Shown here: one piece after another, positions 5,272-64,000 of the stretch
Layout: each line of letters starts with the position of its first letter
How positions within the stretch are numbered: the first letter of the stretch is position 1
Assembly: GCF_006345805.1 (NCBI RefSeq)
Contig: NC_042998.1
Span: forward strand, 145,390,001-145,454,000
DNA length: 64,000 nt
Direction: 5' to 3'
DNA from: Octopus sinensis
Lineage: Eukaryota
Position numbers and translations under genes: made by a program
The notes under the pieces: model-generated
The model's database searches: none
The model's input: only the letters and a program-made list of their open reading frames with translations
What the model was told of the DNA's origin: nothing

Positions 5272-5500
5272 TTTCTTTACTACCCACAAGGGGCTAAACA
5301 CAGAGGGGACAAACAAGGACAGACAAAGGGATTAAGTCGACTACATCGACCCCAGTGCGTAACTGGTACTTAATTTATCGACCCCGAAAGGATGAAAGGC
5401 AAAGTCGACCTCGGCGGAATTTGAACTCGGAACGTAAACAGACGAAATACGGCTACGAATTTCGCCCGGCGTGCTAACGTTTCTACCAGCTCGCCGCCTT
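5272..5500 (-). mobile_element. tRNA-derived SINE family 1 (tail type a)
   Basis: Minus strand: A-box-like GGCGAGCTGGTAGAAACG, B-box GAGTTCAAATTCC, then core GCCTTTCATCCTTTCGGGGTCGATAAATTAAGTACCAG. About nine copies in the window. Confidence 0.85.
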
Positions 5501-5513
5501 ATTTATATATGTA

Positions 5514-6429: not shown

Positions 6430-7810
6430 TTAACATCCCAGCATCCCACTTGATATCCTTAGGATTGCGGCCGTTTCTCAGCCTTCTTTATGTAGTAATA
6501 TTTTTAGAGTCAATTATGTTTATGTATATGCATTGGCTAACTCGATCATGCCTGGTTTTTATATTCTGTAGGAGCAAGGATCAATCGACAGCAATGTGAT
6601 CAATGCTCTCAAGTTTGTCATCGCTGATTCTACACTTTGTGTTTGCTCCATTGTTTGTGACATTACCATGATAGTTCCGAGTGAAGAGACTCTAATCTTG
6701 TGCCACTACGATAAATCCTTTATCGGCTTTCAAACCAGTGCTTTGCACCACTGAGGAGTTCTTCTCGTATCTATATCAGCTTCCCCAGCCTGTTTGGGAT
6801 ATTGCCCATGCAATGGTTTTTCTTACCACAGTATCGACATTTTTTTCAAGCTTTCTTGTTTAGTTTTTTTCTCACACTTTTTGCTGCCGTAGTGAGTTGT
6901 GTGTTTCATTATCATCATCATAATCAAGGAGGTTGAGCTCTCGTCGTGTTGTCTTACAGCTGTATCATCCTGTCAGTGTTAATTTGGATGTACATTTGAA
7001 ATCCTATCGTGATCGTTTTGCAGGACGTTTCAAGTTGGATTAGACCTCTACAGCCTTCCTTTCATGGAAGATAGAGTCTATGGACGTTTGATTTTGGGTG
7101 ATGAATCCTGTTTAATGTCAGCAGTTTCCTGGTCTCTATGTCCATACGTTCAATCAAGTTCCAGTTCAATCAAGTTCCAGTTAATGACATTAAGTCTATA
7201 CTGGATACCTGGTACTCTGGTACCGCCAGGGAGTTTATAGCTGCAATTCTATTCTGGATGTTCAGCTCAGTATTCAGGACCATTCTGACGCAGCTATAAT
7301 ATTCTTTCCTGATCGTCTCTTCACTGATCTGTGCTGATCCCTTTCCCTTAGTTTACCCCCAAGAGACTTATGGAAGCCTACTTGATCCAGATCCTTGATA
7401 GATGTATCATTATCAAGTTGGGTCGAGGTTATTAGCTGTCAGTTTACCACGTTTGATTGTAGCTTTTGCAGGCCAAATTCCATATTGGTGTCATCACTGA
7501 ATTTTTTCACAGTTGCTAATAGCCTTTTCAGAACTTTGTCATCTTTTGCATATAATTTCAGATCATCCATGAAGAACAAGTGCGAGATGGTCTTGTCAAA
7601 CATTTTGTACCCGTAATTTGTTCTATTCAACTCGTGGGACAAGGGAATGAAGGAAAGACAGAAGAAAAGGGGGAGAGTGAATCGCTCTGGAATATTCCAC
7701 GATCTATTTTGATGTTCTCCAACACATCCAAGCCTTTCTCGTGGTTGAGGAACAATGTTTTGTTCCACAGTCCCATACTATGTATAATTGGTTTTATTGT
7801 GGGTCATCCA
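6430..7810 (-). mobile_element. R4/Dong-type non-LTR retrotransposon fragment (RT plus C-terminal region), decayed
   Basis: ORF 7439-7768 has ...PLSHELNRTNYGY...ISHLFFMDDLKLYAK. Further downstream on the minus strand: HGQYP...GFIVVAQD, a degenerate zinc knuckle (KCRI...ESIDHI) and RHDRV. Confidence 0.85.
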
Positions 7811-16640: not shown

Positions 16641-16824
16641 GAGTGAGAGAGCAGTGCATGCCATCAAAGTGACACTGGTGTAAAATATATGAAGCCCAGT
16701 ATACCCATCTCGGCAACTCAACTGATAAGAGTACACCAGGCACATGCATCACAACCATATTTGCGCGACATGGTGATCTCATATCAAGATAAACAGCACT
16801 GGACCTTGCAGGTGGGACCCAGTT
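16641..16824 (-). mobile_element. Non-coding element X, 5'-truncated copy
   Basis: Aligns with 22274-22460 (GCATGCCATCAAAGTGACACTGGTGTAAAATATA...CGACATGGTGAT...CCCAGTT). Stops abruptly at an (ATT)n array. Confidence 0.8.
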
Positions 16825-16841
16825 ATTATTATTATTATTAC

Positions 16842-16895
<54 letters not shown>

Positions 16896-16915
16896 CATCA
16901 TCATCATCATCATCA

Positions 16916-16958
<43 letters not shown>

Positions 16959-16983
16959 CATTATTATTATTATTATTATTATT
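16822..16983. repeat. (ATT)n/(ATC)n array between element X and Dong copy A
   Basis: Direct reading. Confidence 0.97.
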
Positions 16984-18355
16984 CAGTAGTTTTATTTTAA
17001 TTTTTATAGCGTGCTTTCACTTCACTACCGAGCGCAGCTCTGTGTGCCTTGGGTATGTGCTGTGATTTGTTGTGATGCTCTGATGGTTATTGTATGGAAG
17101 TGTTCTGCGTAGGATGTGTGCAGTGCCTAGTAGTGCAATTTTCTGTATGTTATATGTGTTTGTAAGTCCTGGTGTTTTTGTTATGTATTTGTCTGAATAT
17201 TTTTTTATCATGCCTAATGCACCTACTATGATAGGAATTGTTTCTGTTTTCAGATTCCACATTCTAGTTACCTCTATTTCCAGGTCTTTGTATTTTGAGA
17301 GTTTCTCCATTTCTTTTAGAGACACGTTGTCATCTGCCGGTACTGATACATCAATTAGAAAGCATTTTTTTTCTTCATGGTCTCTGACAACTATATCTGG
17401 TCTGTTGGCCTTAATTTCTCTATCTGTGTGTATCGGCATATCCCAGAGTATGGTTGCTTTCTCGTTTTCTGTGACCTTTTCTGGTGTGTGCCTATACCAT
17501 CTTTTTTCTGTTGTTATTCCATAATGTTGGCATAGCTTCCAATGTATGTAAGTTCCAACTCTGTCATGTCTGTGATATATTCCTTCTTAGCCAGGACTGG
17601 GCAGCTAGAGATAATATGATTTATTGTTTCTTGTCCATCTCCACATATTCTGCAGTTACTTGTAATATTTCTTTTCATTACATGTCTTTGGTAATTTCTG
17701 GTGGGGAGGCTTTGGTCTTGTGCTGCAATTAAAAATCCCTCTGTTTCTGCTTTGAGTCCTGAGCTTCTCAACCATTGCTGGGATTTTTCTTTGTCTATTT
17801 CTTTTGCGTTTAGTTTAGTCCAGTATTTACCATGAAGGGGCTTTTCTTGCCATCGTTTTATCATGGTTCGTTGCTGTTCTATTTTTAGTTTGGATTTCAT
17901 TTTTTTTATAGCTTTTGTTGTTTCTTCATCTTCTTCTTCTTCTTCATGTTTATTAGGTGGTATGATTTCTTGTTTGTATTTGTCAGCTTCCTTAAATACT
18001 GAGAACAGTTTTTTGTTTTGCTCGTGTTTTGCCGCTATCTGGATCAGTTTTCCTTCCTTCTGAAGTAGATATTTTTGCAGTCCTATGGTGGTTATTTTAT
18101 AGTAGTTTTCCAGCTGTATAAGGCCTCTACCACCATCTATACGTTGTATATATAGTCTTTCTATGTCAGATTTTGGGTGATGCATCCTAGATCCTGTCAT
18201 TATTTTTCTTGTTTTCCTGTCTATTTTGGTCAGTTCATTTCGTGTCCAGTTAAGGATATTGTAGCTGTAACTTATAACTGGGACAGCTAAAGTGTTGATA
18301 CCTATTATCTTGTTTTTAGCATTGAGCTCTGTGTTGATCTAACTCGTCTATAATA
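16984..18355 (-). mobile_element. R4/Dong-type LINE copy A, 5'-truncated, well preserved (zinc knuckle plus restriction-like endonuclease)
   Basis: ORF 17514-18200: HHPKSDIERLY...GGRGL, LIAAQDQSL, CRIC...ETINHIISSC. ORF 17017-17439: TDREIKANRPDIVV...FLID...KEMEKLSKYKDL...LLGTAHILRR (PD-(D/E)xK RLE). The 3' UTR runs directly into (AAT)n. Confidence 0.93.
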
Positions 18356-18384
18356 TTTTTTTTTTATTTTCTCTTTCTTTATTT

Positions 18385-18395
18385 ATTATTATTTC

Positions 18396-18483
<88 letters not shown>
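18385..18483. repeat. (ATT)n array between Dong copies A and B
   Basis: Direct reading. Confidence 0.97.
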
Positions 18484-18484
<1 letters not shown>

Positions 18485-21400
18485 TTCATATATACTTTAA
18501 TAGCTTAGACTGTTGGAAAAGAAAGAATCCTAATATCGGGCTACAACAAGTATCCTTAGATGCCAAGGACCCTCCTATTGGGTCACAACAAGTAACCTTA
18601 GGTGCCAAGAACCCCCCCCCCCCCAAATTATCCTAACTGTTCCTAATACACTGTTTTCTTGAGCTGTACTAAACTGGGTTTTATGCCTATTTCCTCCATT
18701 CATCAGTTCAGATATTTAGGGATTGTTCTCAATGTACCTATAACTACTGGGATACATTTTACCCACACTTTCCATAGTCTCTGTAATTCAATAGCTAGAT
18801 CCTGGTAGTTTGCTATTTTTCTATACTTCTCTTGTTCATTTTTTTATCATCTGGGTCTGTAAAGTCAATTATCTATCATTTCTAATTCCCTTTATTTACT
18901 ACTACCAACCCAGGCCTTCTAGATTCTATTACTGCGTTAGTCTGAATGTTAACATCCCACAAGGTCTTGTATTTCTTACTTTCTAGTACTTTACGAGGTT
19001 CATGTTCATACCATTTATCACTATGTTCAAATCCTAGCTTTCTACATAGCTCCCAGTGGATTGCGCTCCCTTGACTGTCATGTCTTTTCTTTGTATTCTT
19101 TTTGTGCCAGCATGCTACATTCACTTATGAGTAACGCTTTCCTCTTGATTTGCATAATCTACATTGGGAATTTACATGTTTTTTGTCTATGTTGGCTTTT
19201 ATCCAATTAGTCCTTAATGCTCGATCTTGTGCAGCTACTAACACACTTTCTGTCTCCCTCTTCATCTTTTTTTTCTGCAACGATAACCATGTCTCACTAC
19301 TACTATTTGCTGAAACTATCTTTAGGAATCTACCATGCAATGCCTTCTTCTGCCAGTCAGATAATTTCTGTACTTTTTTCTGGCTTTGAATTTCGTCTGT
19401 GTTTTTGGTTTTCCTATGTCTTGCTGTGACTCTAGTAGCTTTAATAAACTTTCTTCACTATTACCTACATTAGAGTATATATCTACTCTAGCTAACTCCA
19501 CGTAGTCTTCTACTGATATTAACCCCCTTCCGCCTTCTTTTCTATGTAGATATAATCTTACTACTCTTGCCTTTGGGTGGAGTCCTCCATTTATATTGAA
19601 TTCCTCCCTAGTTCTTCTTTCTAGCTTTGCTAATTTAGTTTTTGTCGAATGTACAAAAGCTGCTGAGTATCTAAGTAATAATACTGCCCAAGTATTTACA
19701 GCCTTCACTTGATTTGGACCATTTAACTTTGACTTCATTAGCTTCCTCACCCTTCTGATGTACTCCTCGATTTCCGATTTCATTTCTGTAGTTAGTACAG
19801 AAAAACTAATACTTAGAACTCTCTCCTCCTTTCAATGATTTTAATGTCTGCCCATCTGGTAATTGGATTCCTTCGGTCTTGACTACATGTCTCCTTCTCA
19901 TGACTAATATTGCACACTTATCTATGCTAAATTCCATGCCTATATCTTTGCTGAAGACTCTTAGAGTTTGTATTAAGGAATGTATTTCTTTTTCATTCTT
20001 ACTAAAAGGCTTCAGATCATCCATGTAGAGCAAATGGTTAATTTTTCTATTACTATTTCTGAACTGATACCCTGCCTTTGCCTTCCTTGATACTAAACAG
20101 AAGGGGATCAAACATAAGACAAATATTAAAGGGGCCAACGAGACCATCTGGAAAATACCTCTTTTGATATTAACTATCCCTAGGAGTGTTTTACCTGAGT
20201 AGAGATTTACTTTCCCTTTATTCATGCTAAAGCTAATTAAATTTTCTTATGTTGTCTGCTATGCTGAATATACTCAAACATTTACTTATCTATGTTGTGA
20301 CATCATGTCATAAGCTTTCCTATAATCTATCCATGCTATTGTTGAATTTTTTTCCTTTTAGCTTTTATTTCATTTAGAACTGCTTTGTCTATATATAACA
20401 GATCATGCGTTCCTCTAGTCTTCTTCCTACAACCTTTCTGTTCTTCACGTAGTAAATTCTGGTTGTCAAGGTACTTGTAAATGCTCTCTGAAAGCATTCC
20501 TGTTAACAGCTTCCACACTGATAGTAAGCGAATGATTGGTCTATAGTATTACTCTTATCTTTCATGATGAATATTGTCCTCCATCTAGTCATCCAATCTG
20601 CTATTATTCCTCCATTAAGGCAATCCTGAAGTTGTTCCCTCAGCCTCCCAAGTAAACTACTAAATTTCTTTAACCAGTATTCTTGAACTAAATCTGGTCC
20701 TGGTCCCTTCCAATTCGGTATTTTCCCTTACACTTTACTTATTAATGTACTAGCTAATGTTAGATCTAACTGCTTCTCACTCACTAATAATTCTTCCCTC
20801 GTTTTCTTTAACCATACTGCATCTCCATTATAATTGACTGGCTTATCCTAAATATTACTCCAGAACTTTTTAACTTCCTCTGCATTAGGTTTCTCAGCTT
20901 CAGTACTTTCAAATAATCTATTCTATTGATACTGGTCTATTCTTTTCTGATATCTAGAGAGCTTACCTGCTACTGCTATGATACGTTGTTTCAACTCTTC
21001 TATTATTATCCCAAATACTTTTTCCTTACTAAGTATCTTTTCTCGAGGAAAGGTTTACATCTTGTGTCTCCTAACTTGTTTGTTTTCTAGGCTTCTATTC
21101 TACTCAGATCTTGTCTTAATGTGTTCACTTTATTTTGTAGTCTCCTTTTCCACATTTGCTCCTTTTCAATCTTTCCCTGTGAGATATCTAATCTTCTCTC
21201 TCCTGCATAGATCACTAAGTTAGGATCTCCTATATTTTTAGTATCTCTCCTACCGATAACAGAATCTACTTGCCTAGTCATTTCTAGCAGCTTCCTTCTG
21301 TTGGTGCCTTTTAATGCTGGCAATCTTTTTCTTACTTCTTTACTCATTACTTCTTGCAACCCACTCACCTAAATCACTTAAGTCGATGGTGTCAGTTTTC

Positions 21401-22170
21401 CCTTCTTTATTGGTAGCACTATTATTATATTTTCCTTTAGGTTCTTCTTTGGTTTGAGATGTATCTCTTATGTTGTTGCTTGTCTTTACCATTGCCTGGT
21501 CTTTCCTTTCCAGTTCTCTTGTGATCTCTTCTACCTCCAATTCTGTCATCCACTTTCTTCTCCTAATAGTATTAGCTTGATCAACTTAATCTCTGCTCAG
21601 TCACTTTAAACATATCCTTCACTACCCAAAGTTTTAACATCAGTTTTCTATAGCCCCTTCTTTTAGGTTCATTTTCTAAGTAGCACTGCATCACTATCCT
21701 GTTTTCTTCGCTGGTCCACTTCCTTCTCTTTGCTCTATTATCAGCTGACGATGTATTGGGATAACAGCTGTGGTCAGTTTGCATCCTTATTTAACCACTG
21801 CCGAGCGAGAGACCTTCCCTTAAAGGTCCAGTTTCATTTTCGATGTTACAATCGAGTTTCTTCGGAAACTCCTGTCTCTCATAAACTGAGGTAAGGTAAC
21901 GTTCGTCACTATCGTCATCGCCACTTTTCGACATCTAAAAGTTTCAAGCATCATTTGTTGCCCCTTTGAGCGGGTGGGGTGGAGTGATCAGCATTTTTTG
22001 TTTAGTGGGGATATTATATTGTATCAGTACTTTTGTTTGGGGGTTTGGTTTGGGTTTCTGTTGTATTAGTTGTTATATTGTGCGTTGTTTGTGCAGTGCA
22101 GGTAGCGTTCTTCTGATGAATATCGGTCTTCTACGGCACATGTTGTGTGTTTTGTTCATTTTGCTCGTTA
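18484..22170 (-). mobile_element. R4/Dong-type LINE copy B, apparently full length (~3.7 kb), frameshifted
   Basis: In-frame ATG at 21934 (MSKSGDDD..., one stop) leads into the N-terminal domain RRKWTSEENRIVMQCYLENEPKRRGYRK. RT: EEQKGCR, GIFQ, NHLLYMDDLK (19806-20225). Then LHPKARVVRLYLHRKEGGRG, AAQDRALRTN...CRLC, HWELCRK...WDVNIQTNAVIESRRPG. Both ends abut (AAT)n. Confidence 0.92.
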
Positions 22171-22258
<88 letters not shown>

Positions 22259-22273
22259 GTTATTACTATTATT
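22171..22273. repeat. (ATT)n/(ATC)n array
   Basis: Direct reading. Confidence 0.97.
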
Positions 22274-22820
22274 GAGTGAAAGAGCAGGGCATGCCATCAA
22301 AGTGACACTGGTGTAAAATATACGATGCCCGGTATACCCATCATGACTACTTAAGTTTACATCAAGCACATCCACCACAACCATTTGTATGCGACATGGT
22401 GATTTCATATGAGGATAAGCAACGCATAACTTTGCAGATGGGGGCCCAGTTAGAATTTTCTTCAGGCCGAGTGGCCCATCCCGTCCAAAGGGTCCCTGAA
22501 TAAGGGTTGTTTAAGGATGTGGAACGAAACACCCATGTTTCCAGAGGAGAATTATTCATACCCCTCAGAATTTCTCTCAACACATGGCTATGATGCTTCC
22601 CCACTGCTGCTCGTAATCAGAGATGCACATATCGTCAGCAACCAGGGAATGCTCAACCGGTTAAAGTTAAACAACTGACAAGCAAATCTGTGGTATTGAG
22701 CAGAATATTTGCTGTAGCCCATCTTTTATAACAAGACAAAACATCAAAACGCACATAACATTTCCAATCAGTTAAGATATGAATCCATGAAAGCCAGTGC
22801 ATGGTACTGCATCAGGGCAT
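22274..22820 (-). mobile_element. Non-coding element X, apparently complete (~550 bp), SINE-like/non-autonomous
   Basis: Non-repetitive block bounded on both sides by trinucleotide arrays. The minus-strand 3' end GCTCTTTCACTC is followed by AATAATAGTAAT. Second, truncated copy at 16641-16824. No RT or endonuclease motif. Confidence 0.72.
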
Positions 22821-22821
22821 T

Positions 22822-22822
<1 letters not shown>

Positions 22823-22874
<52 letters not shown>

Positions 22875-22880
22875 TTATTA

Positions 22881-22938
<58 letters not shown>
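22823..22938. repeat. (TAC)n then (TAT)n array
   Basis: Direct reading. Confidence 0.97.
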
Positions 22939-25140
22939 TTACATTTCACTCCTCAGAGGTTTCGATTTCACTTGCTATGGCTAATTCTGTAAGAGCGGAC
23001 AACAGTTTTCTGAGGATGTTCTATTCTCATGTCAATCCTAATTTCTCCAATATATTTCTCTAACCTTGTCAATGCTCCCAGTGCCCCTACAACTACTGGG
23101 TTGACAGTTACTTTCTTCATTGCCCACATTCGTGCAATATTATCGTTTTAGTGGTTTTTACTTCTCATTCTTCCCCAGTTCTTTACCAACCACTTCTACA
23201 CCCCCAGGTATGACAATATCTATGATCTTGGTTTCTTTCATTGTTTTATCAACTACAACAATGTCTAATCTCCTAGCATCAATCACTGAATCACACTGAA
23301 TTGTAAAATCCCACAAGATCTTATATACATTGTTCTCGGTGATACCTTCTGTCCTTCTAAGACTTTACTCACACAATCTCCAGTGAACATTCTAGGCTAC
23401 GTTACCATGCCCCCTTTTGTATCCCTTTTGAACTAATTTACCAAACTCACAATATGTGAGATTGTTTTATTTTTGATGCCAAATATCCTGCAAAGGGGCG
23501 ATTCACTACTTTATCTATTTGGAACTTGGTGCAGTTAGTCCTCAGATCTTTTTCCTGAGCGCTGCATATCAATGCTTCAGTGCATCCTTTCAGCGTACTT
23601 TTCTTTAGTCACCTCCAGCTGTTGCTCTAGTCTTTCCCTTCCAATTCTCTGAAGTATTTCCCATGCATCGCTTTTATTTTTTAGTTCAATCTTTGTTTTC
23701 CATCTTGTTTTTTTTTTGCTTTTAGGTGATGCATACGATGCAGTGTCATCAGCTTTCGCATTTTGACATCAGCTTAGTTGATCTCAGAGAGGGGTCAGTT
23801 TGAAACTGTATGTGATTACAGGCATGGCCAATTTATTTGTGGCCTCAATTTTGTTACTGGCATTCAGCTAGGTTTTCAGAATGGCTCTTACTCTTCGGTA
23901 ACACTTCTTCCTTATCTTTTCTCTGATTAGTGAGTGTCTAATCTCGTCTCATCCACATACTCCTAGATACCTATAACTGCACTGAGATTCTAATTCTTTT
24001 ATCGCAGTGTCTCTATCTAGAATGATGTTGCATGTCTTTGATAGTATTTCCCTTGGTAATTGCAGACTTGACGCATTTGTCGAGCCCAAATTCCATTTTG
24101 ATGCTATCATTAAATTGTTTGACTGTGTGTAGGAGCACTTGCAGCTGGTAGTCATTTTTTGCAAACAGTTTCAAGTCACCTATATGTAGGATGTGAGTAA
24201 CTGTTTTCCATAATTTGTTTCATTCAGGAATTTACTTAGAGGAAATAGTGCTAAGCAGAACAGTAAAGGAGATAATGAGTCTACTTGAAGATACTTCAAT
24301 TGATATTGAGTTGTCCAGCGTTTATACTTGTAGAGTCAGTGTCGAGAATTAATGTAATTTTTCAGAACTTCATAGTGTGAGATACAAAATTCTTGATTTC
24401 TGGTGTAGTTTTGAACATCTCCAAGCATTCCTTTATCCAACTGTGAGAAAGACTATCAAATGCCACTGGGAGATGCTCTTTTACCTGTTGCGACAATCTT
24501 CTAAGATCATTCTGTTAATTAATAATTGATGTTGTTGTTGATGACAAAGGCATATGTGCGTTCCATTAGGAGAACTGTAAGGGTTTTGTACATTGTTGTC
24601 ACTGTCTGTAGTTCTTACGTTCTTTTTTTGTTTCATTAATGCCATTGGCCAACCATTTAGGTATCGTTTGCGGTTTCCTTCATTACTGCGTTGTAACATG
24701 AAGTTTCTTGTCTGAGTTTACACATTGAGACAATAGTTCGGGATCTTATCCATACAAGGTGACTGAACTTTTTTAATGTGAGTCTGATATCTTCTACACT
24801 TATCTCATATTTGGCCTCTTATAAGCTCGGGTTCTTCTCGACTATTAATTTATGAAATATCACAGTTATGATCCTTTTCAACTGCCCAAATTTTCCTCCA
24901 GATTTCCTGCATTTCATGCACTTAGAGGACTTCTATTATGATGGTGTTGTTTCAATATGCCTATAAACCTCTTTGGATTAATTTTAATCATGCTATTATC
25001 TTTGGAGGAACTGAATCATTTTACAAAGTGGGGTATATATCGTTTTACAAAGTGGGGTATATGAACTGCTTTGGCCTGGACCTTTTTGTTTAACTTCTGT
25101 ACTATTTCATCAAACTGGTGTTCTGGCGTCAGCTCGTACT
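22939..25140 (-). mobile_element. R4/Dong-type LINE copy C, 5'-truncated, strongly decayed
   Basis: Minus-strand translations: AFDSLSHSWIKECLEMFK (~24420), VTHILHIGDLKLFAKND (~24180), SYRYLG (23949 ORF), NILRKLLS near the 3' end. The 3' UTR GAGGAGTGAAATGTAAA runs into (AAT)n. Confidence 0.85.
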
Positions 25141-25494
25141 TCCATTTTATTTTATATTGTAATCGCATATCGCTTACAGAACGAAATTCGCTTCTATTTT
25201 TTTTCTCCTAGATATATGACAGTTTATTGGTGATTTAAATTCAGTGATTATTTGCATATTTTGTCTTTGTTAGTGTAAAGTCGTTTTATTGTTGTTTTGT
25301 TTTCTTTCGTTTATGATATGTCATTTTGTGTGCGTATGTGTGTATTGTATTAACATTATTTACCTGGTGAATAAGTATTAACATGTATACATGTACGTAT
25401 AAACAGTTGGATGTATACATAACTAATTAATTTACGTACTTGTTATTACTCTTGAATACTGTCCTGATGTCATATGGGCCGCATATCTAAAAGC

Positions 25495-26400
25495 AACCAT
25501 ATGGCTGTGATATGTTGATGACATCTTTATACTCTGGCCCCACCAGAAAGATGTCCAAGTGCTATTAGATCATGTGATCTCAATAAATCCATCCATATAG
25601 TTCACAATGGAAAAAGAAAAAGACAATCAGCTAGCATTACTGGACGTATTAATAACACGCACCAAGTATGGATTCAGGACATCAGTATACCGCAAGCCGA
25701 CCTTCACTGGACGATACCTCAACTTCAATTCCCACCATCCATACAGTGTAACGAGAAGGATTGCTCAGTGCCTAAAACATCGAGCAAAGTATATAAATAG
25801 CGATCGTGATACCCACAACGAAGAATTGATCAAGCTCAGTTACAATCCATTAAGCAAGAACTACACCAAAAACATACTATCCACCCCAATTATGAAGAAA
25901 AAGAGAGGATGAAACCAATAAACTGTCCACAGTCTGTCAACTCTATATGAAAGGCCTCTCCGATAAGATACAAAAGATGTACGGCCCACATGACATTAGG
26001 GCAGTATTCAAGAGTAATACAACACTTCGCAAATATCTCCATCGAGTAAAATTATTAATAGAAGAGAATTTGATCAAAAACTGCGTGTACTCCATCCCAT
26101 TCAACTGTGGTAGGTTATACAAAGGCGAAACATGCCATTCCCTCAAAATAAGGGTAGACTAACATCGCAAAGCTGTGACACGAGGAGATATTGATAAATC
26201 GGGTACAGCTGTTCATGTATGTAAAAATGGAGACTACCTCTCCCTGTGGGATGAAGTTAAAATAATAGACAGAGAACACCCCTGGAAAATACGAAAAACT
26301 AAAAGAAGCAGCACATATGCTAGGATATAAGAACCTCCTAAGCAGACCGAGTGCAGATATGAGCAGCATATGGGAACCGGTATTAAGGAAGGATAGGAGA
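25495..26400 (+). mobile_element. Penelope-like element fragment (RT C-terminus plus GIY-YIG endonuclease)
   Basis: YVDDIFILW at ~25510; ORF 25607-25912 LALLDVLI...SVYRKPTFTGRYLNFNSHHP; ORF 25947-26162 NCVYSIPFNCGRLYKGET...LKIRV. Confidence 0.92.
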
Positions 26401-26492
26401 TTTATAAGCCCTAAAATTCACTCCATAATTGTCCACAAGCATATGGTGTAGCGGTTAAGATCGTTCGATTCCAGATAGAGACCTGAATGGTA

Positions 26493-26557
<65 letters not shown>

Positions 26558-26653
26558 CGAAAAATACCTTAGGAATGAGAATCCAGCCGAAACGTTGTTA
26601 AAAAGATGAGGACAAATATCCGTCAAATGGAAATAATTACTATTATTGTCTTT

Positions 26654-26875
26654 AGGTCGGTGACCTGGCAGAATCCTTAGTACGTCGGATAAAATGCCTG
26701 GTAACCTTTATTCCGGCTCTTTACGTTCTTAGTACGAATCTCAACGAGGCACGCTTTACTTTTCATCTTTTCGGGGTCGGTAAAAATAAGTACCAAACAA
26801 GTAATGAGATCGATGTAATCGATCTGCCTCCCCTCCTCCAAATTGCCTCCTTTGTGCCAAAATTTGAAACCATTC
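26654..26875 (+). mobile_element. SINE family 1 (tail type b)
   Basis: CTGGCAGAATCCTTAG head and TTTTCATCTTTTCGGGGTCGGTAAAAATAAGTACC core, followed by (TTC)n(TTA)n. Confidence 0.8.
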
Positions 26876-26913
26876 TTCTTCTTCTTCTTCTTCTTCTTCT
26901 TCTTCTTCTTCTT

Positions 26914-26988
<75 letters not shown>

Positions 26989-27031
26989 GTTATTATTATT
27001 ATTATTATTATTGTTATTGTTATTATTATTA

Positions 27032-27088
<57 letters not shown>
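26874..27088. repeat. (TTC)n then (TTA/TTG)n compound microsatellite
   Basis: Direct reading; produces the spurious poly-N/poly-K ORF 26677-27303. Confidence 0.97.
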
Positions 27089-35331: not shown

Positions 35332-35500
35332 TACTACTACTACTACTACTACTGCTGGTGCTGCTGCTGCTACTGCTGCTGCTGTTATTATTGTTGTTGT
35401 TATTATTAGGTTTGCAAACTGGCAGAATCGTTAAGCATGTCAGGCAAAATGCTTGTGCTTTTCATCATTTCGTGGTCGATAAAATAAATATCAATCAATA
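35180..35500 (+). mobile_element. Two SINE family 1 fragments separated by a trinucleotide array
   Basis: GGTTCGATGTAATCGAC...GCCTTGTGCC (tail b) and CTGGCAGAATCGTTAAGCATG...TTTCATCATTTCGTGGTCGATAAAAT (head/core with deletion). Confidence 0.65.
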
Positions 35501-35524
35501 TTGTACCTACAGTAGAAGGAATTC

Positions 35525-37210
<1,686 letters not shown>

Positions 37211-37212
37211 AG

Positions 37213-37325
37213 AAGAGCAAAATGCTTAGCGGCATTTCGCCCGTCTTCTGAGTTCAAATTCCACCGAGGTTGATTTTGTCTTACATACTTTCGGGGTCAA
37301 TAAATTAAGTACCAGTGAAACACTA
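37213..37325 (+). mobile_element. SINE family 1 fragment truncating the Dong copy
   Basis: GCAAAATGCTTAGCGGCATTTCG...GAGTTCAAATTCCACCGAGG...TTTCGGGGTCAATAAATTAAGTACCAG. Confidence 0.8.
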
Positions 37326-43595: not shown

Positions 43596-43810
43596 AAGGC
43601 AACGAGTTGGCAGAATCGTTAGCACGCCAGGCGAAATGCTTAGAGGTAATTCGTCTGCTGCTACATTCTGAGTTTAAATTCCGCCGAAGTCGACTTTGCC
43701 TTTCATCATTTCAGGATTGATAAATGAAGTACCAGTTGGTACTGGAGTCGATCTAATCGACTGGCCTCTTTCGCCAAAATTTCAGGCCTTGTGTCTATAG
43801 TAAAAAGGAT
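43596..43810 (+). mobile_element. SINE family 1 (tail type b), complete
   Basis: TTGGCAGAATCGTTAGCACGCC head, GAGTTTAAATTCC B-box, GTCGACTTTGCCTTTCATC core, AAAATTTCAGGCCTTGTG tail. Confidence 0.85.
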
Positions 43811-62444: not shown

Positions 62445-62517
62445 TATAATGATAATGATGGTGATGATGATGATAATGACGATGACGACGACGATGATGA
62501 TGATGATGATGATGATG

Positions 62518-62579
<62 letters not shown>

Positions 62580-62580
62580 G
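62445..62580. repeat. (GAT)n/(GAC)n then (AAT)n array
   Basis: Direct reading. Confidence 0.95.
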
Positions 62581-63207
62581 TTTTCTCCTATAGGCACAGG
62601 GCCTGAAATATTCTTGGGGAGGGGGTTAGTCGATAACATCGACCCTAATGTACTGATACTTATTTCATTGATGCCAAAAAGATAAAAAGCAACGTCAACC
62701 TTGTGGGAATTTGAACTCAGAACACAAGGACCGACGAAATGCCGCTAAGTATTTAGCCCGGTGTACTAACGATTCTTATTTCTTTACTGTCTACAAGGGG
62801 CTACACACAGAGGGGACAAACAAGGACAGAAAAATGGATTAAGTCGGTTATATCGGCCCCAGAGCGTAACTGGTACTTATTTAATCGACCCCGAAAGGAT
62901 GAAAGGCAAAGTCGACGTAGCGGCAGAAGAAATACCGCTAAGCATTTCGCCCGGCGTGCTAACGTTTCTGCGAGTTTGCCGCCTTCAATAATAATCCTTT
63001 CCACAAAAGGCACAGAGCCTGAAATTTGCGGGGAGGGCGTAAATTGTTTACATCGAGCCCAGTGCGTAAAGGTACTTATTTAATAGACCCCGGAAGAATG
63101 AAAGTCAAAGTTGACCTCGGCAGAATTTGAACAGAACGTAGCGAGAGACGAAATACTGCTAAGCATTGCACCCGGCGTGCTAACGATTCTGCCAGCTCGT
63201 CGCCTTC
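62580..63207 (-). mobile_element. Cluster of three tandem SINE family 1 copies (tails b, a, b)
   Basis: Three successive matches to GAATTTGAAC.../GCCCGG(C/T)GTGCTAACG at ~62580-62775, 62776-62990 and 62993-63207. Confidence 0.82.
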
Positions 63208-63247
63208 AATATTAATAATAGTAATAATAATAATAACAACAATAATA

Positions 63248-64000
63248 ATGGTCATAACGAAGTCAAGAAAGCTTCTAGCGTTACATAGAGTCCATCATCC
63301 ACGTTCAGACACTGATCGCCTATTCATGAAGAGGGCAAATGGAGGAAGGGGACTGATAAGTGTAGAAGACTGCGTACGTTTTGAAGTCAAGCGCTTAATG
63401 AGATACCTAGGAAACCTTGCTAGTGTCAGTTAGGAATGAGGAAATATTGAAAGCAGAGAAAATAGGAAAAACAAAGGAAAAAGTACAAAAAGGACATGAA
63501 GAAGAATTACGCAACAAGAAACTACACAATCAGTTCCATGTAGCCACAACAAGAATGGCTGGGAAACATAGGTGAGATTGGCTGAAGAAAAAAACACTGA
63601 AAAAAAAGAAACTGAGAGCACTATACTGGCAGTGCAAGACGAAGCTTTGGCCACAAATTGGAGGGTCAACTTTAGGAATGAGCAAGTGTCTCCGCTGTGC
63701 CATATCTGTAATAGAGTGGATGAAACCATTACCCATATCACGAACGAATGCCCTAGACTTGCTCAAAACCACTACAAGTTGTGATTACACGATCAGGTAG
63801 CAAAAGTATTACATTGGAAACTGCAAAAAGTGGGGGCTAAAAAGGCCAAACGTGGTATGAGCACAAAATGCAGAAGGTGGCTGAGTCGGAGACTAGCAAA
63901 ATCCTCTGAGATTTCCCAATCCAAACAGATCAGGTGCTAGAGCATAACAAACCGGACATAGTGGTGGTCAACAAGATGCATCACATGTGTTATATAGCTG
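63248..64000 (+). mobile_element. R4/Dong-type LINE, 5'-truncated, runs off the window end
   Basis: HHPRSDTDRLFMKRANGGRGLISVEDCV; ESTILAVQDEAL...CHIC...ETITHITNEC; HDQV...HWKL; DFPIQTD...HNKPDIVVV. Preceded directly by (TAA)n at 63212-63248. Confidence 0.9.

What the first reader, a model, noticed from the sequence alone, without database searches (positions are those of the whole stretch)
16641..25140. Same-strand train of five retroelements spaced by (AAT)n arrays
Seen: X (16641-16824), array, Dong A (16984-18355), array, Dong B (18484-22170), array, X (22274-22820), array, Dong C (22939-~25140). All lie on the minus strand and all four junctions between them are trinucleotide arrays. The three LINEs differ in sequence and in decay (A nearly intact, C heavily decayed), so this is not a segmental duplication. 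Established: Dong elements of the R4 clade are sequence-specific for TAA repeats. Inference: each insertion leaves a new (AAT)n tail that becomes the next target, giving a self-extending, polarised retroelement array that records insertion history. The Dong copies at 63248 and 35728 also abut (TAA)n.
Basis: partly seen in the sequence, partly recalled or inferred. Interest (0 to 1): 0.75.

Follow-up and report, generated by a model that had tools for sequence, protein, structure and literature searches.

The report
Dong retrotransposon pile-up in (TAA)n microsatellite
Five jumping-gene copies sit head-to-tail on one strand, separated by AAT repeats, because this LINE family (Dong/R4 type) inserts only into (TAA)n repeats in one polarity; this is a real but expected by-product of known biology, and I found the same pattern in termite and coral DNA.

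Summary
On the minus strand the order is Dong C (5'-truncated, decayed), (AAT)19(GTA)17, X (547 nt), (GAT)11(AAT)18, Dong B (full length in extent, decayed), (AAT)n, Dong A (5'-truncated, nearly intact), (AAT)n(ATG)8(AAT)n, X (3' 184 nt).

A, B and C all cover the same protein region at about 35-40% identity. They are three independent insertions of different families, not pieces or duplicates of one element. All three carry RT, a CCHC knuckle and a restriction-like endonuclease.

Every intact 3' end runs straight into (AAT)n. So does an independent copy of the A family from another dataset.

In 80 unrelated metagenome loci (names suggest termite and coral hosts), 51 of 57 array-flanked element ends have the array in the element's polarity. 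Eight of 10 neighbouring copy pairs are co-oriented.

Best explanation: repeated strand-specific target-primed insertion into one (TAA)n locus. Co-orientation follows from the polarity of the target.

He proposed that each new tail seeds the next insertion, so that the order records history. Trains in other taxa show no age order, and the arrays look homogenised.

This is a known kind of system, and interest is low to moderate.

The parts
16641..16824 (-). Xa: 5'-truncated copy (3' 184 nt) of the non-coding element X. Its 3' end (cactcaat) abuts unique DNA with no tail.
   Evidence: blastn and nhmmer against Xb: 79% identity overall, 93% over the last 69 nt. Junction sequence.
16825..16983 (-). 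Array I, read on the minus strand: (AAT)8 g (ATA)13 (ATG)8 (ATA)18 g (TAA)6
   Evidence: TRF and junction map.
16984..18385 (-). Dong A: 5'-truncated copy covering aa 301-712 of reference P0018. It has 0 stops, 1 frameshift and a lost stop codon. The CCHC knuckle is near 17560-17640 and the RLE motif (RPDIVV..IDVSVP..EK..KY) near 17150-17440. The 3' UTR ends ...aaaactactg, followed by (AAT)n.
   Evidence: Pfam zf-RVT. tblastn. Invariant CCHC and PD..D..K columns. PDB R2 match. An independent copy of the family, L081, ends the same way.
18386..18484 (-). Array II, read on the minus strand: (AAT)19 (ATA)10 aaga (AAT)3
18485..22170 (-). Dong B: full length in extent (3.7 kb). The 5' UTR is about 390 nt (22170-21785). 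The N-terminal region with a Myb-like W..EE..L..CY stretch lies at 21584-21784. RT is at about 19809-20545, and the CCHC/RLE region at about 18650-19350. It is decayed (about 10 stops, 4 frameshifts).
   Evidence: Pfam RVT_1. tblastn. N-terminal peptides are collinear with the upstream regions of full-length relatives L013, L029 and L021, whose 5' UTRs also start right after (TAA)n.
22171..22273 (-). Array III, read on the minus strand: aataatagtaataac (GAT)11 (AAT)18
22274..22820 (-). Xb: the longer copy (547 nt) of the non-coding element X. Its 3' end (cactcaat) runs into an AAT-type tail.
   Evidence: No tRNA or Rfam match. No protein-space relatives.
22821..22938 (-). Array IV, read on the minus strand: (AAT)19 (ATA)3 (GTA)17
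22939..25140 (-). Dong C: 5'-truncated copy covering about aa 25-703 of the references, heavily decayed (10-12 stops). It carries an internal 24-nt duplication at 25015-25062. There is no array at its 5' end.
   Evidence: tblastn. TRF. 5' flank sequence. The 5' limit was placed by eye, by comparison with B's N-terminal frames.

Best explanation
The region is one (TAA)n microsatellite locus. It has been hit at least five times by target-primed reverse transcription of Dong/R4-type LINEs: three different families (A, B, C), plus two copies of a short non-coding passenger, X.

The element-encoded restriction-like endonuclease nicks the repeat on a defined strand. It probably acts together with an N-terminal DNA-binding region. 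Every insertion therefore ends up with (AAT)n on its sense strand.

Several insertions into one array are thus forced into the same orientation. Each insertion splits the array, so the leftover repeats appear as spacers. Incomplete reverse transcription explains the 5' truncation of A, C and Xa.

Shown here:
- identity, independence and polarity of the copies;
- arrays at the junctions;
- the same pattern in other taxa.

Inferred:
- the nicking strand and its mechanism;
- that X is mobilised in trans by a Dong protein;
- that repeats are added at each 3' end.
For: - RT in B and zf-RVT in A.
- Invariant CCHC and RPD..D..K columns across 30 relatives.
- A profile of the family matches R2 proteins through the thumb, CCHC and RLE regions.
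- A, B and C overlap in protein coordinates and differ in sequence and decay.
- All three intact 3' ends in the window, and an independent copy of the A family (L081), run into (AAT)n.
- In 80 metagenome loci, 23 of 41 3' ends have a same-polarity (AAT)>=4 array within 400 nt, against 5 with only an opposite-polarity array.
- In the same loci, 28 of 56 truncated 5' ends have a same-polarity array within 80 nt, against 1 with only an opposite one.
- 8 of 10 neighbouring copy pairs are co-oriented. In the 2 opposed pairs the array polarity flips with the element.
- L041 is a three-copy train with (AAT)19-23 spacers and copies only 71-76% alike.
- Literature: Dong targets (TAA)n in insects, molluscs and cnidarians (PMC7998251, PMC3812793). 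Dong-R4 is abundant and recently active in Octopus (PMC13282606).
Against: - Neither outer edge of the train has an array. This is unexpected if a long array was split at random points.
- Xa has no AAT tail.
- Clade assignment rests on domain architecture and target, not on an RT tree with Dong and R4 reference sequences.
- About half of the element ends in the other-taxon sample lack a perfect (AAT)>=4 array.
- X has only two copies in view, shows no 3' similarity to A, B or C, and has no detectable relatives elsewhere.
Confidence: 0.85

Rival explanations
1. Self-extending train. A first element lands and brings its own (AAT)n tail. The next element inserts into that tail, and so on. The train grows in one direction and its order is a chronological record.
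For: - No arrays at the outer edges of the train.
- Decay falls from C through B to A, in the 5' to 3' direction.
- Each intact 3' end is followed by a pure (AAT) run.
Against: - There are only three datable elements. A monotonic order in one direction has a 1 in 6 chance.
- Xa, the last element, has no tail.
- In eight co-oriented pairs from other taxa, the downstream copy is younger in 4, older in 3, and tied in 1.
- Other trains do have outer arrays: L041 and L066.
- Pure (AAT)19 beside the decayed C shows array turnover.
Confidence: 0.15
2. The arrays arose after insertion, from the elements' own A/T-rich tails. The elements landed near each other without any targeting.
For: LINE and SINE tails are a known source of microsatellites (PMC3812793).
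Against: - Arrays abut the variable 5' truncation points of isolated copies, where no tail exists. This holds for 28 of 56 such ends, against 1 with an opposite-polarity array.
- Full-length copies L013 and L029, and B, start directly after (TAA)n.
- The chance of four junctions all coinciding with arrays is about 2e-8.
Confidence: 0.03
3. Segmental or tandem duplication, unequal crossing-over, or a single rearranged element.
For: The unit 'element plus array' repeats, and X occurs twice.
Against: - A, B and C share no nucleotide similarity.
- They are about 35-40% identical in protein over the same region.
- They show very different decay.
- The X copies are only 79% alike and are truncated differently.
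Confidence: 0.01

Closest known systems
Dong (Bombyx mori) with DongAg and DongBg: R4 clade of RLE-bearing non-LTR retrotransposons
   Same: A single ORF with RT followed by a CCHC knuckle and a PD-(D/E)xK endonuclease. Insertion into (TAA)n. Full-length relatives start right after ...TAA, as the Bombyx 5' junction does (PMC3774820 primer).
   Different: At least three diverged families share one array here. Membership by RT phylogeny was not tested. No 5' HDV-like ribozyme was detected by Rfam.
R2 and R4 in rDNA; Utopia in U2 snRNA gene arrays (PMC4640811)
   Same: RLE LINEs that insert in one orientation into a repeated target and can lie in tandem, with target sequence between the copies.
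   Different: Their target is a long gene unit with one site per unit. Here the target is a 3-nt repeat, so many sites lie within about 100 bp and copies pack tightly.
Zepp (Chlorella) and the telomeric TRAS/SART and HeT-A/TART arrays (from my own knowledge, not checked here)
   Same: Head-to-tail LINE arrays in which the tail or repeat left by one copy receives the next.
   Different: Those arrays use APE-type or endonuclease-independent insertion, at chromosome ends or into poly(A). Here insertion is by an RLE into an internal (TAA)n array.
Alu and L1 clustering in A-rich tails (PMC3812793 for tails and microsatellites)
   Same: Retroelement tails and microsatellites feed each other.
   Different: L1 endonuclease has a loose TTTT/A preference and no strict polarity lock to a microsatellite.

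Membership tests
R4/Dong clade non-LTR retrotransposon | Reverse transcriptase domain | tested here: met
   Pfam RVT_1 in a B ORF (E = 4.5e-9). A, B and C align to RT-containing relatives. Relative P0018 scores RVT_1 at 7e-30.
R4/Dong clade non-LTR retrotransposon | C-terminal CCHC zinc knuckle followed by a PD-(D/E)xK restriction-like endonuclease, with no APE domain | tested here: met
   Invariant C227, C230, H239, C244 and N310, P312, D313 with the D328 and K-Y columns. The profile aligns to the R2 protein CCHC and KPDLI..VDV..EK..KY motifs.
R4/Dong clade non-LTR retrotransposon | Insertion into (TAA)n with fixed polarity | tested here: met
   Window junctions. Independent A-family copy L081. 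51 of 57 array-flanked ends in 80 loci are polarity-matched.
R4/Dong clade non-LTR retrotransposon | N-terminal Myb/SANT-like region without zinc fingers (PMC7998251) | tested here: inconclusive
   B has a W..EE..L..CY stretch, and its N-terminus is collinear with full-length relatives. Pfam gives no Myb hit.
R4/Dong clade non-LTR retrotransposon | RT phylogeny groups the element with Dong (L08889) and R4 (U29445) rather than R2, NeSL, HERO or CRE | not tested
   No reference sequences of these clades were available in the tools. Only R2 proteins from the PDB were available, and they are distant (E = 2e-12).
R4/Dong clade non-LTR retrotransposon | 5' HDV-like self-cleaving ribozyme at the element's first nucleotide (PMC3774820) | tested here: inconclusive
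   Rfam E-value scans found none in B or in the full-length relatives. L013 and L029 share a conserved 5' block. HDV-like ribozymes are poorly detected by sequence models.
SINE or other non-autonomous partner of Dong (for X) | Multi-copy, variably 5'-truncated, with a conserved 3' end | tested here: met
   Two copies, 547 and 184 nt, with the last 69 nt 93% identical. There are only two copies, and none was found outside the window.
SINE or other non-autonomous partner of Dong (for X) | Pol III head derived from tRNA, 5S or 7SL | tested here: not met
   No tRNA and no Rfam family. Xb may itself be 5'-truncated.
SINE or other non-autonomous partner of Dong (for X) | 3' end shared with the partner LINE | tested here: not met
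   No similarity between the 3' end of X and the 3' UTRs of A, B or C. A partner family may lie outside the window.
Segmental or tandem duplication | Units alike at the nucleotide level | tested here: not met
   blastn finds no A/B/C similarity.

The most novel reading that the evidence does not exclude
(TAA)n loci act as self-renewing landing pads. Each Dong or X insertion copies fresh repeats at its 3' end, so a hit locus becomes a better target and grows into a multi-family, co-oriented island. Read-through transcription of such a train, together with 5' ribozyme cleavage, could release RNA of downstream full-length members. X would then be a new Dong-dependent non-autonomous element.
Probability: 0.15. 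Interest if true: 0.5.

Novelty: new member of a known kind. Interest (0 to 1): 0.25.

Why it matters
The train is a clean worked example of how a strand-specific, microsatellite-targeting LINE shapes local genome structure. It produces co-oriented pile-ups of unrelated families, splits the microsatellite into spacers, and creates safe landing sites outside genes.

For annotation, it shows that such trains are independent insertions, not duplications.

It does not open a new question. Target specificity of Dong for (TAA)n, and tandem accumulation of site-specific LINEs in repeated targets, are both established.

Tried and rejected
- Looked for the window's own A ORF in public assemblies to name the source. 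Not on record.
- The closest relatives come from Logan run SRR7158634 and assembly GCA_024449705.1. The species could not be resolved with the tools.
- Searched X in protein space. Nothing found.
- Searched X with nhmmer. Only the two known copies.
- Rfam at gathering and E-value thresholds, and ARAGORN. No tRNA head, SINE family or HDV-like ribozyme.
- Tested whether 3' arrays are longer than 5' arrays, which would indicate tail addition. Paired lengths were 33/33, 55/54 and 70/69. This most likely reflects arrays collapsed to about the assembler's k-mer length in short-read contigs, so the test is uninformative.
- Tested for an age gradient along trains in other taxa. None found.
- Pfam on the putative Penelope-like ORFs next to C, and on B's N-terminus. 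No significant hit.
- The original Dong paper (PMC309301) is not held in the library.
- Rejected 'pieces of one rearranged element' and 'segmental duplication'.
Full report
**What is there**

The window is microsatellite-rich eukaryotic DNA. Read on the minus strand, the flagged region has this order:

| Order | Feature | Coordinates | Notes |
|---|---|---|---|
| 1 | Dong C | about 25140 to 22939 | 5'-truncated, decayed |
| 2 | Array IV | 22938-22821 | (AAT)19 (ATA)3 (GTA)17 |
| 3 | Xb | 22820 to 22274 | 547 nt |
| 4 | Array III | 22273-22171 | aataatagtaataac (GAT)11 (AAT)18 |
| 5 | Dong B | 22170 to 18485 | full length in extent |
| 6 | Array II | 18484-18386 | (AAT)19 (ATA)10 aaga (AAT)3 |
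| 7 | Dong A | about 18385 to 16984 | 5'-truncated, nearly intact |
| 8 | Array I | 16983-16825 | (AAT)8 g (ATA)13 (ATG)8 (ATA)18 g (TAA)6 |
| 9 | Xa | 16824 to 16641 | 3' 184 nt of X |
| 10 | Unique DNA | below 16641 | no array |

The one shift is A's 5' end, because its coding sequence (KEKIRKEYYRR) continues to about 18385. Only 1.2% of the window lies within 10 nt of a minus-polarity (AAT)>=5 array. Four junctions all falling in such arrays is therefore about a 2e-8 event.

**What the elements are**

- Pfam finds RVT_1 in a B ORF and zf-RVT in A.
- A's C-terminal 412 aa, bridged across its single frameshift, has hundreds of relatives at about 55% identity in corals, fish, shrimp, starfish and sea anemones. 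One relative is 91% identical and comes from a Logan run.
- In an alignment of 30 relatives, the invariant columns are a CCHC knuckle and the N-RPD...D...K-Y motif of a PD-(D/E)xK nuclease.
- A profile of that alignment matches solved R2 retrotransposon proteins through the thumb, CCHC and endonuclease regions, with E = 2e-12.
- These are therefore restriction-like-endonuclease LINEs, related to R2 but distant from it.
- B's upstream 1.6 kb encodes N-terminal peptides that match, in the same order, the regions upstream of RT in full-length relatives L013, L029 and L021.
- In L013 and L029 a 5' UTR of about 390 nt starts directly after (TAA)n, just as in B.
- B is therefore full length in extent. 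A starts at aa 301 and C at about aa 25-71 of the RT-onward reference proteins (which lack the N-terminal region), so both are 5'-truncated.

**Independence of the copies**

A, B and C have no nucleotide similarity. They overlap over the same protein region at about 35-40% identity. They differ in decay:

| Copy | Stops | Frameshifts | Aligned aa |
|---|---|---|---|
| A | 0 | 1 | 414 |
| B | 10 | 4 | 589 |
| C | 10-12 | 2-4 | 412-463 |

This excludes both a duplication and one rearranged element.

**Element X**

X is non-coding. Its two copies are 79% identical overall and 93% identical over the last 69 nt, and one copy is the 5'-truncated form of the other. That is the signature of a retroposed passenger. 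However:

- it has no tRNA or Rfam head;
- it has no 3' similarity to A, B or C;
- it has no relatives that I could find.

Calling X a Dong-dependent non-autonomous element is an inference.

**Is (TAA)n the target, and is polarity fixed?**

In the window, all three intact Dong 3' ends run straight into (AAT)n. An independent copy of the A family (L081) has the same 3' UTR ending ...aaaactactgaac, followed by (AAT)n.

I then fetched 80 loci encoding relatives from metagenome contigs. The contig names suggest termite-gut and coral samples, so the DNA is probably host DNA. Results:

| Ends assessed | Same-polarity array | Only opposite-polarity array |
|---|---|---|
| 41 3' ends | 23, with (AAT)>=4 within 400 nt of the ORF end (median 144 nt) | 5 |
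| 56 truncated 5' ends | 28, with an array within 80 nt upstream | 1 |

Arrays at variable truncation points cannot come from the element's own tail, so they are target sequence.

Of 10 neighbouring copy pairs, 8 are co-oriented. In the 2 opposed pairs (L054, L064) the array polarity flips together with the element. The window shows the same flip at 35535-35727. L041 is a three-copy same-strand train with (AAT)19, (AAT)23 and (AAT)21 spacers, and its copies are only 71-76% alike.

The literature agrees:
- Dong targets (TAA)n in insects, molluscs and cnidarians (PMC7998251; PMC3812793, citing Xiong and Eickbush 1993 and Kojima and Fujiwara 2004).
- Dong-R4 families are abundant and recently active in Octopus vulgaris (PMC13282606).

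**Mechanism**

The best reading is repeated target-primed reverse transcription into one (TAA)n locus by an endonuclease that reads the repeat in one polarity. Co-orientation then follows automatically, and the spacers are the split remains of the array. This is shown at the level of pattern. The nicking chemistry, the role of the N-terminal region, and trans-mobilisation of X are inferred.

This is not needed and is not supported:

- There are only three datable members.
- The terminal Xa has no tail.
- Trains in other taxa have outer arrays.
- In eight co-oriented pairs from other taxa, the downstream copy is younger in 4, older in 3, and tied in 1.
- A pure (AAT)19 next to the decayed C shows that the arrays are kept homogeneous by slippage.

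Two observations do fit his model and remain unexplained. Both outer edges of the train lack arrays, and decay runs C > B > A from 5' to 3'.

I could not test tail addition. Paired array lengths in short-read contigs were 33/33, 55/54 and 70/69, which most likely reflects arrays collapsed to about the assembler's k-mer length.

**Comparison and membership**

The elements work like Dong. They meet three defining features tested here: RT, CCHC plus RLE, and polar (TAA)n targeting. Two features are inconclusive: the N-terminal Myb-like domain and the 5' HDV-like ribozyme described for Bombyx Dong in PMC3774820. The RT phylogeny was not tested, because no reference sequences were available.

Tandem accumulation of site-specific LINEs in repeated targets is known. 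An example is Utopia in U2 gene arrays (PMC4640811).

**Verdict**

The feature is real and well resolved, but it is an expected consequence of known biology. I rate it a new member of a known kind, with interest 0.25.

Noticed in passing
window 62493-64000 (+): A second co-oriented train, on the plus strand: (GAT)9(AAT)20, then three tandem copies of a roughly 200-nt SINE (about 62578-62776, 62777-62994, 62995-63215), then an AAT-rich tail (63207-63250), then a 5'-truncated Dong copy that runs off the window.
   Followed up: partly
window 35730-37221: Two Dong fragments meet at about 36233-36236: a minus-strand piece (aa 91-267 of P0018) and a plus-strand piece (aa 276-611). They are adjacent in protein coordinates. 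This looks like one plus-strand insertion with an inverted 5' segment, similar to twin priming. It is preceded by (AAT)25, and its 3' part is cut off by a SINE at 37221.
   Followed up: partly
window 35535-35727: Back-to-back arrays of opposite polarity, (TCT)10 (TTA)28 | (AAT)25, where a minus-strand SINE and the plus-strand Dong insertion meet. The same polarity flip occurs in L064 and L054.
   Followed up: partly
window 25440-26560 (+): Next to C's 5' end are ORFs that look by eye like the C-terminal RT and GIY-YIG part of a Penelope-like element. They are followed by a tRNA-like fragment and (TAA)20 at 26497-26557. Pfam gave no significant hit, so this identification is unconfirmed.
   Followed up: partly
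window 26662-27087 and 35410-35647 (-): In two SINE copies the 5' end is preceded by a composite array: (AAT)n(AAG)23 in one and (TAA)28(AGA)10 in the other. Other copies of the same SINE (5280-5510, 43596-43809) have no AAT array at all.
   Followed up: no
window 6491-7803 (-): A Dong fragment (aa 121-575) truncated at both ends, with no AAT array on either side.
   Followed up: partly
L013 76-170 and L029 55-130: Two full-length relatives share a conserved 5' end directly after (TAA)n: GCGCCAGTGGTGG ... TAATATCGGCTTGGTGCCCGACGCTTCACTGGACC, with a variable hairpin between the two blocks. This is a candidate for the 5' self-cleaving ribozyme reported for Bombyx Dong. Rfam did not detect it.
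   Followed up: partly
window 16984-18385 versus proteins P0008, P0022, P0023, P0048: The C-terminal 412 aa of Dong A are about 55% identical to proteins annotated in a coral, a killifish, a shrimp and a starfish. This is unusually high for a LINE across phyla, and suggests either strong constraint or horizontal spread.
   Followed up: no
window 25015-25062: A perfect 24-nt tandem duplication inside the decayed N-terminal region of Dong C.
   Followed up: no
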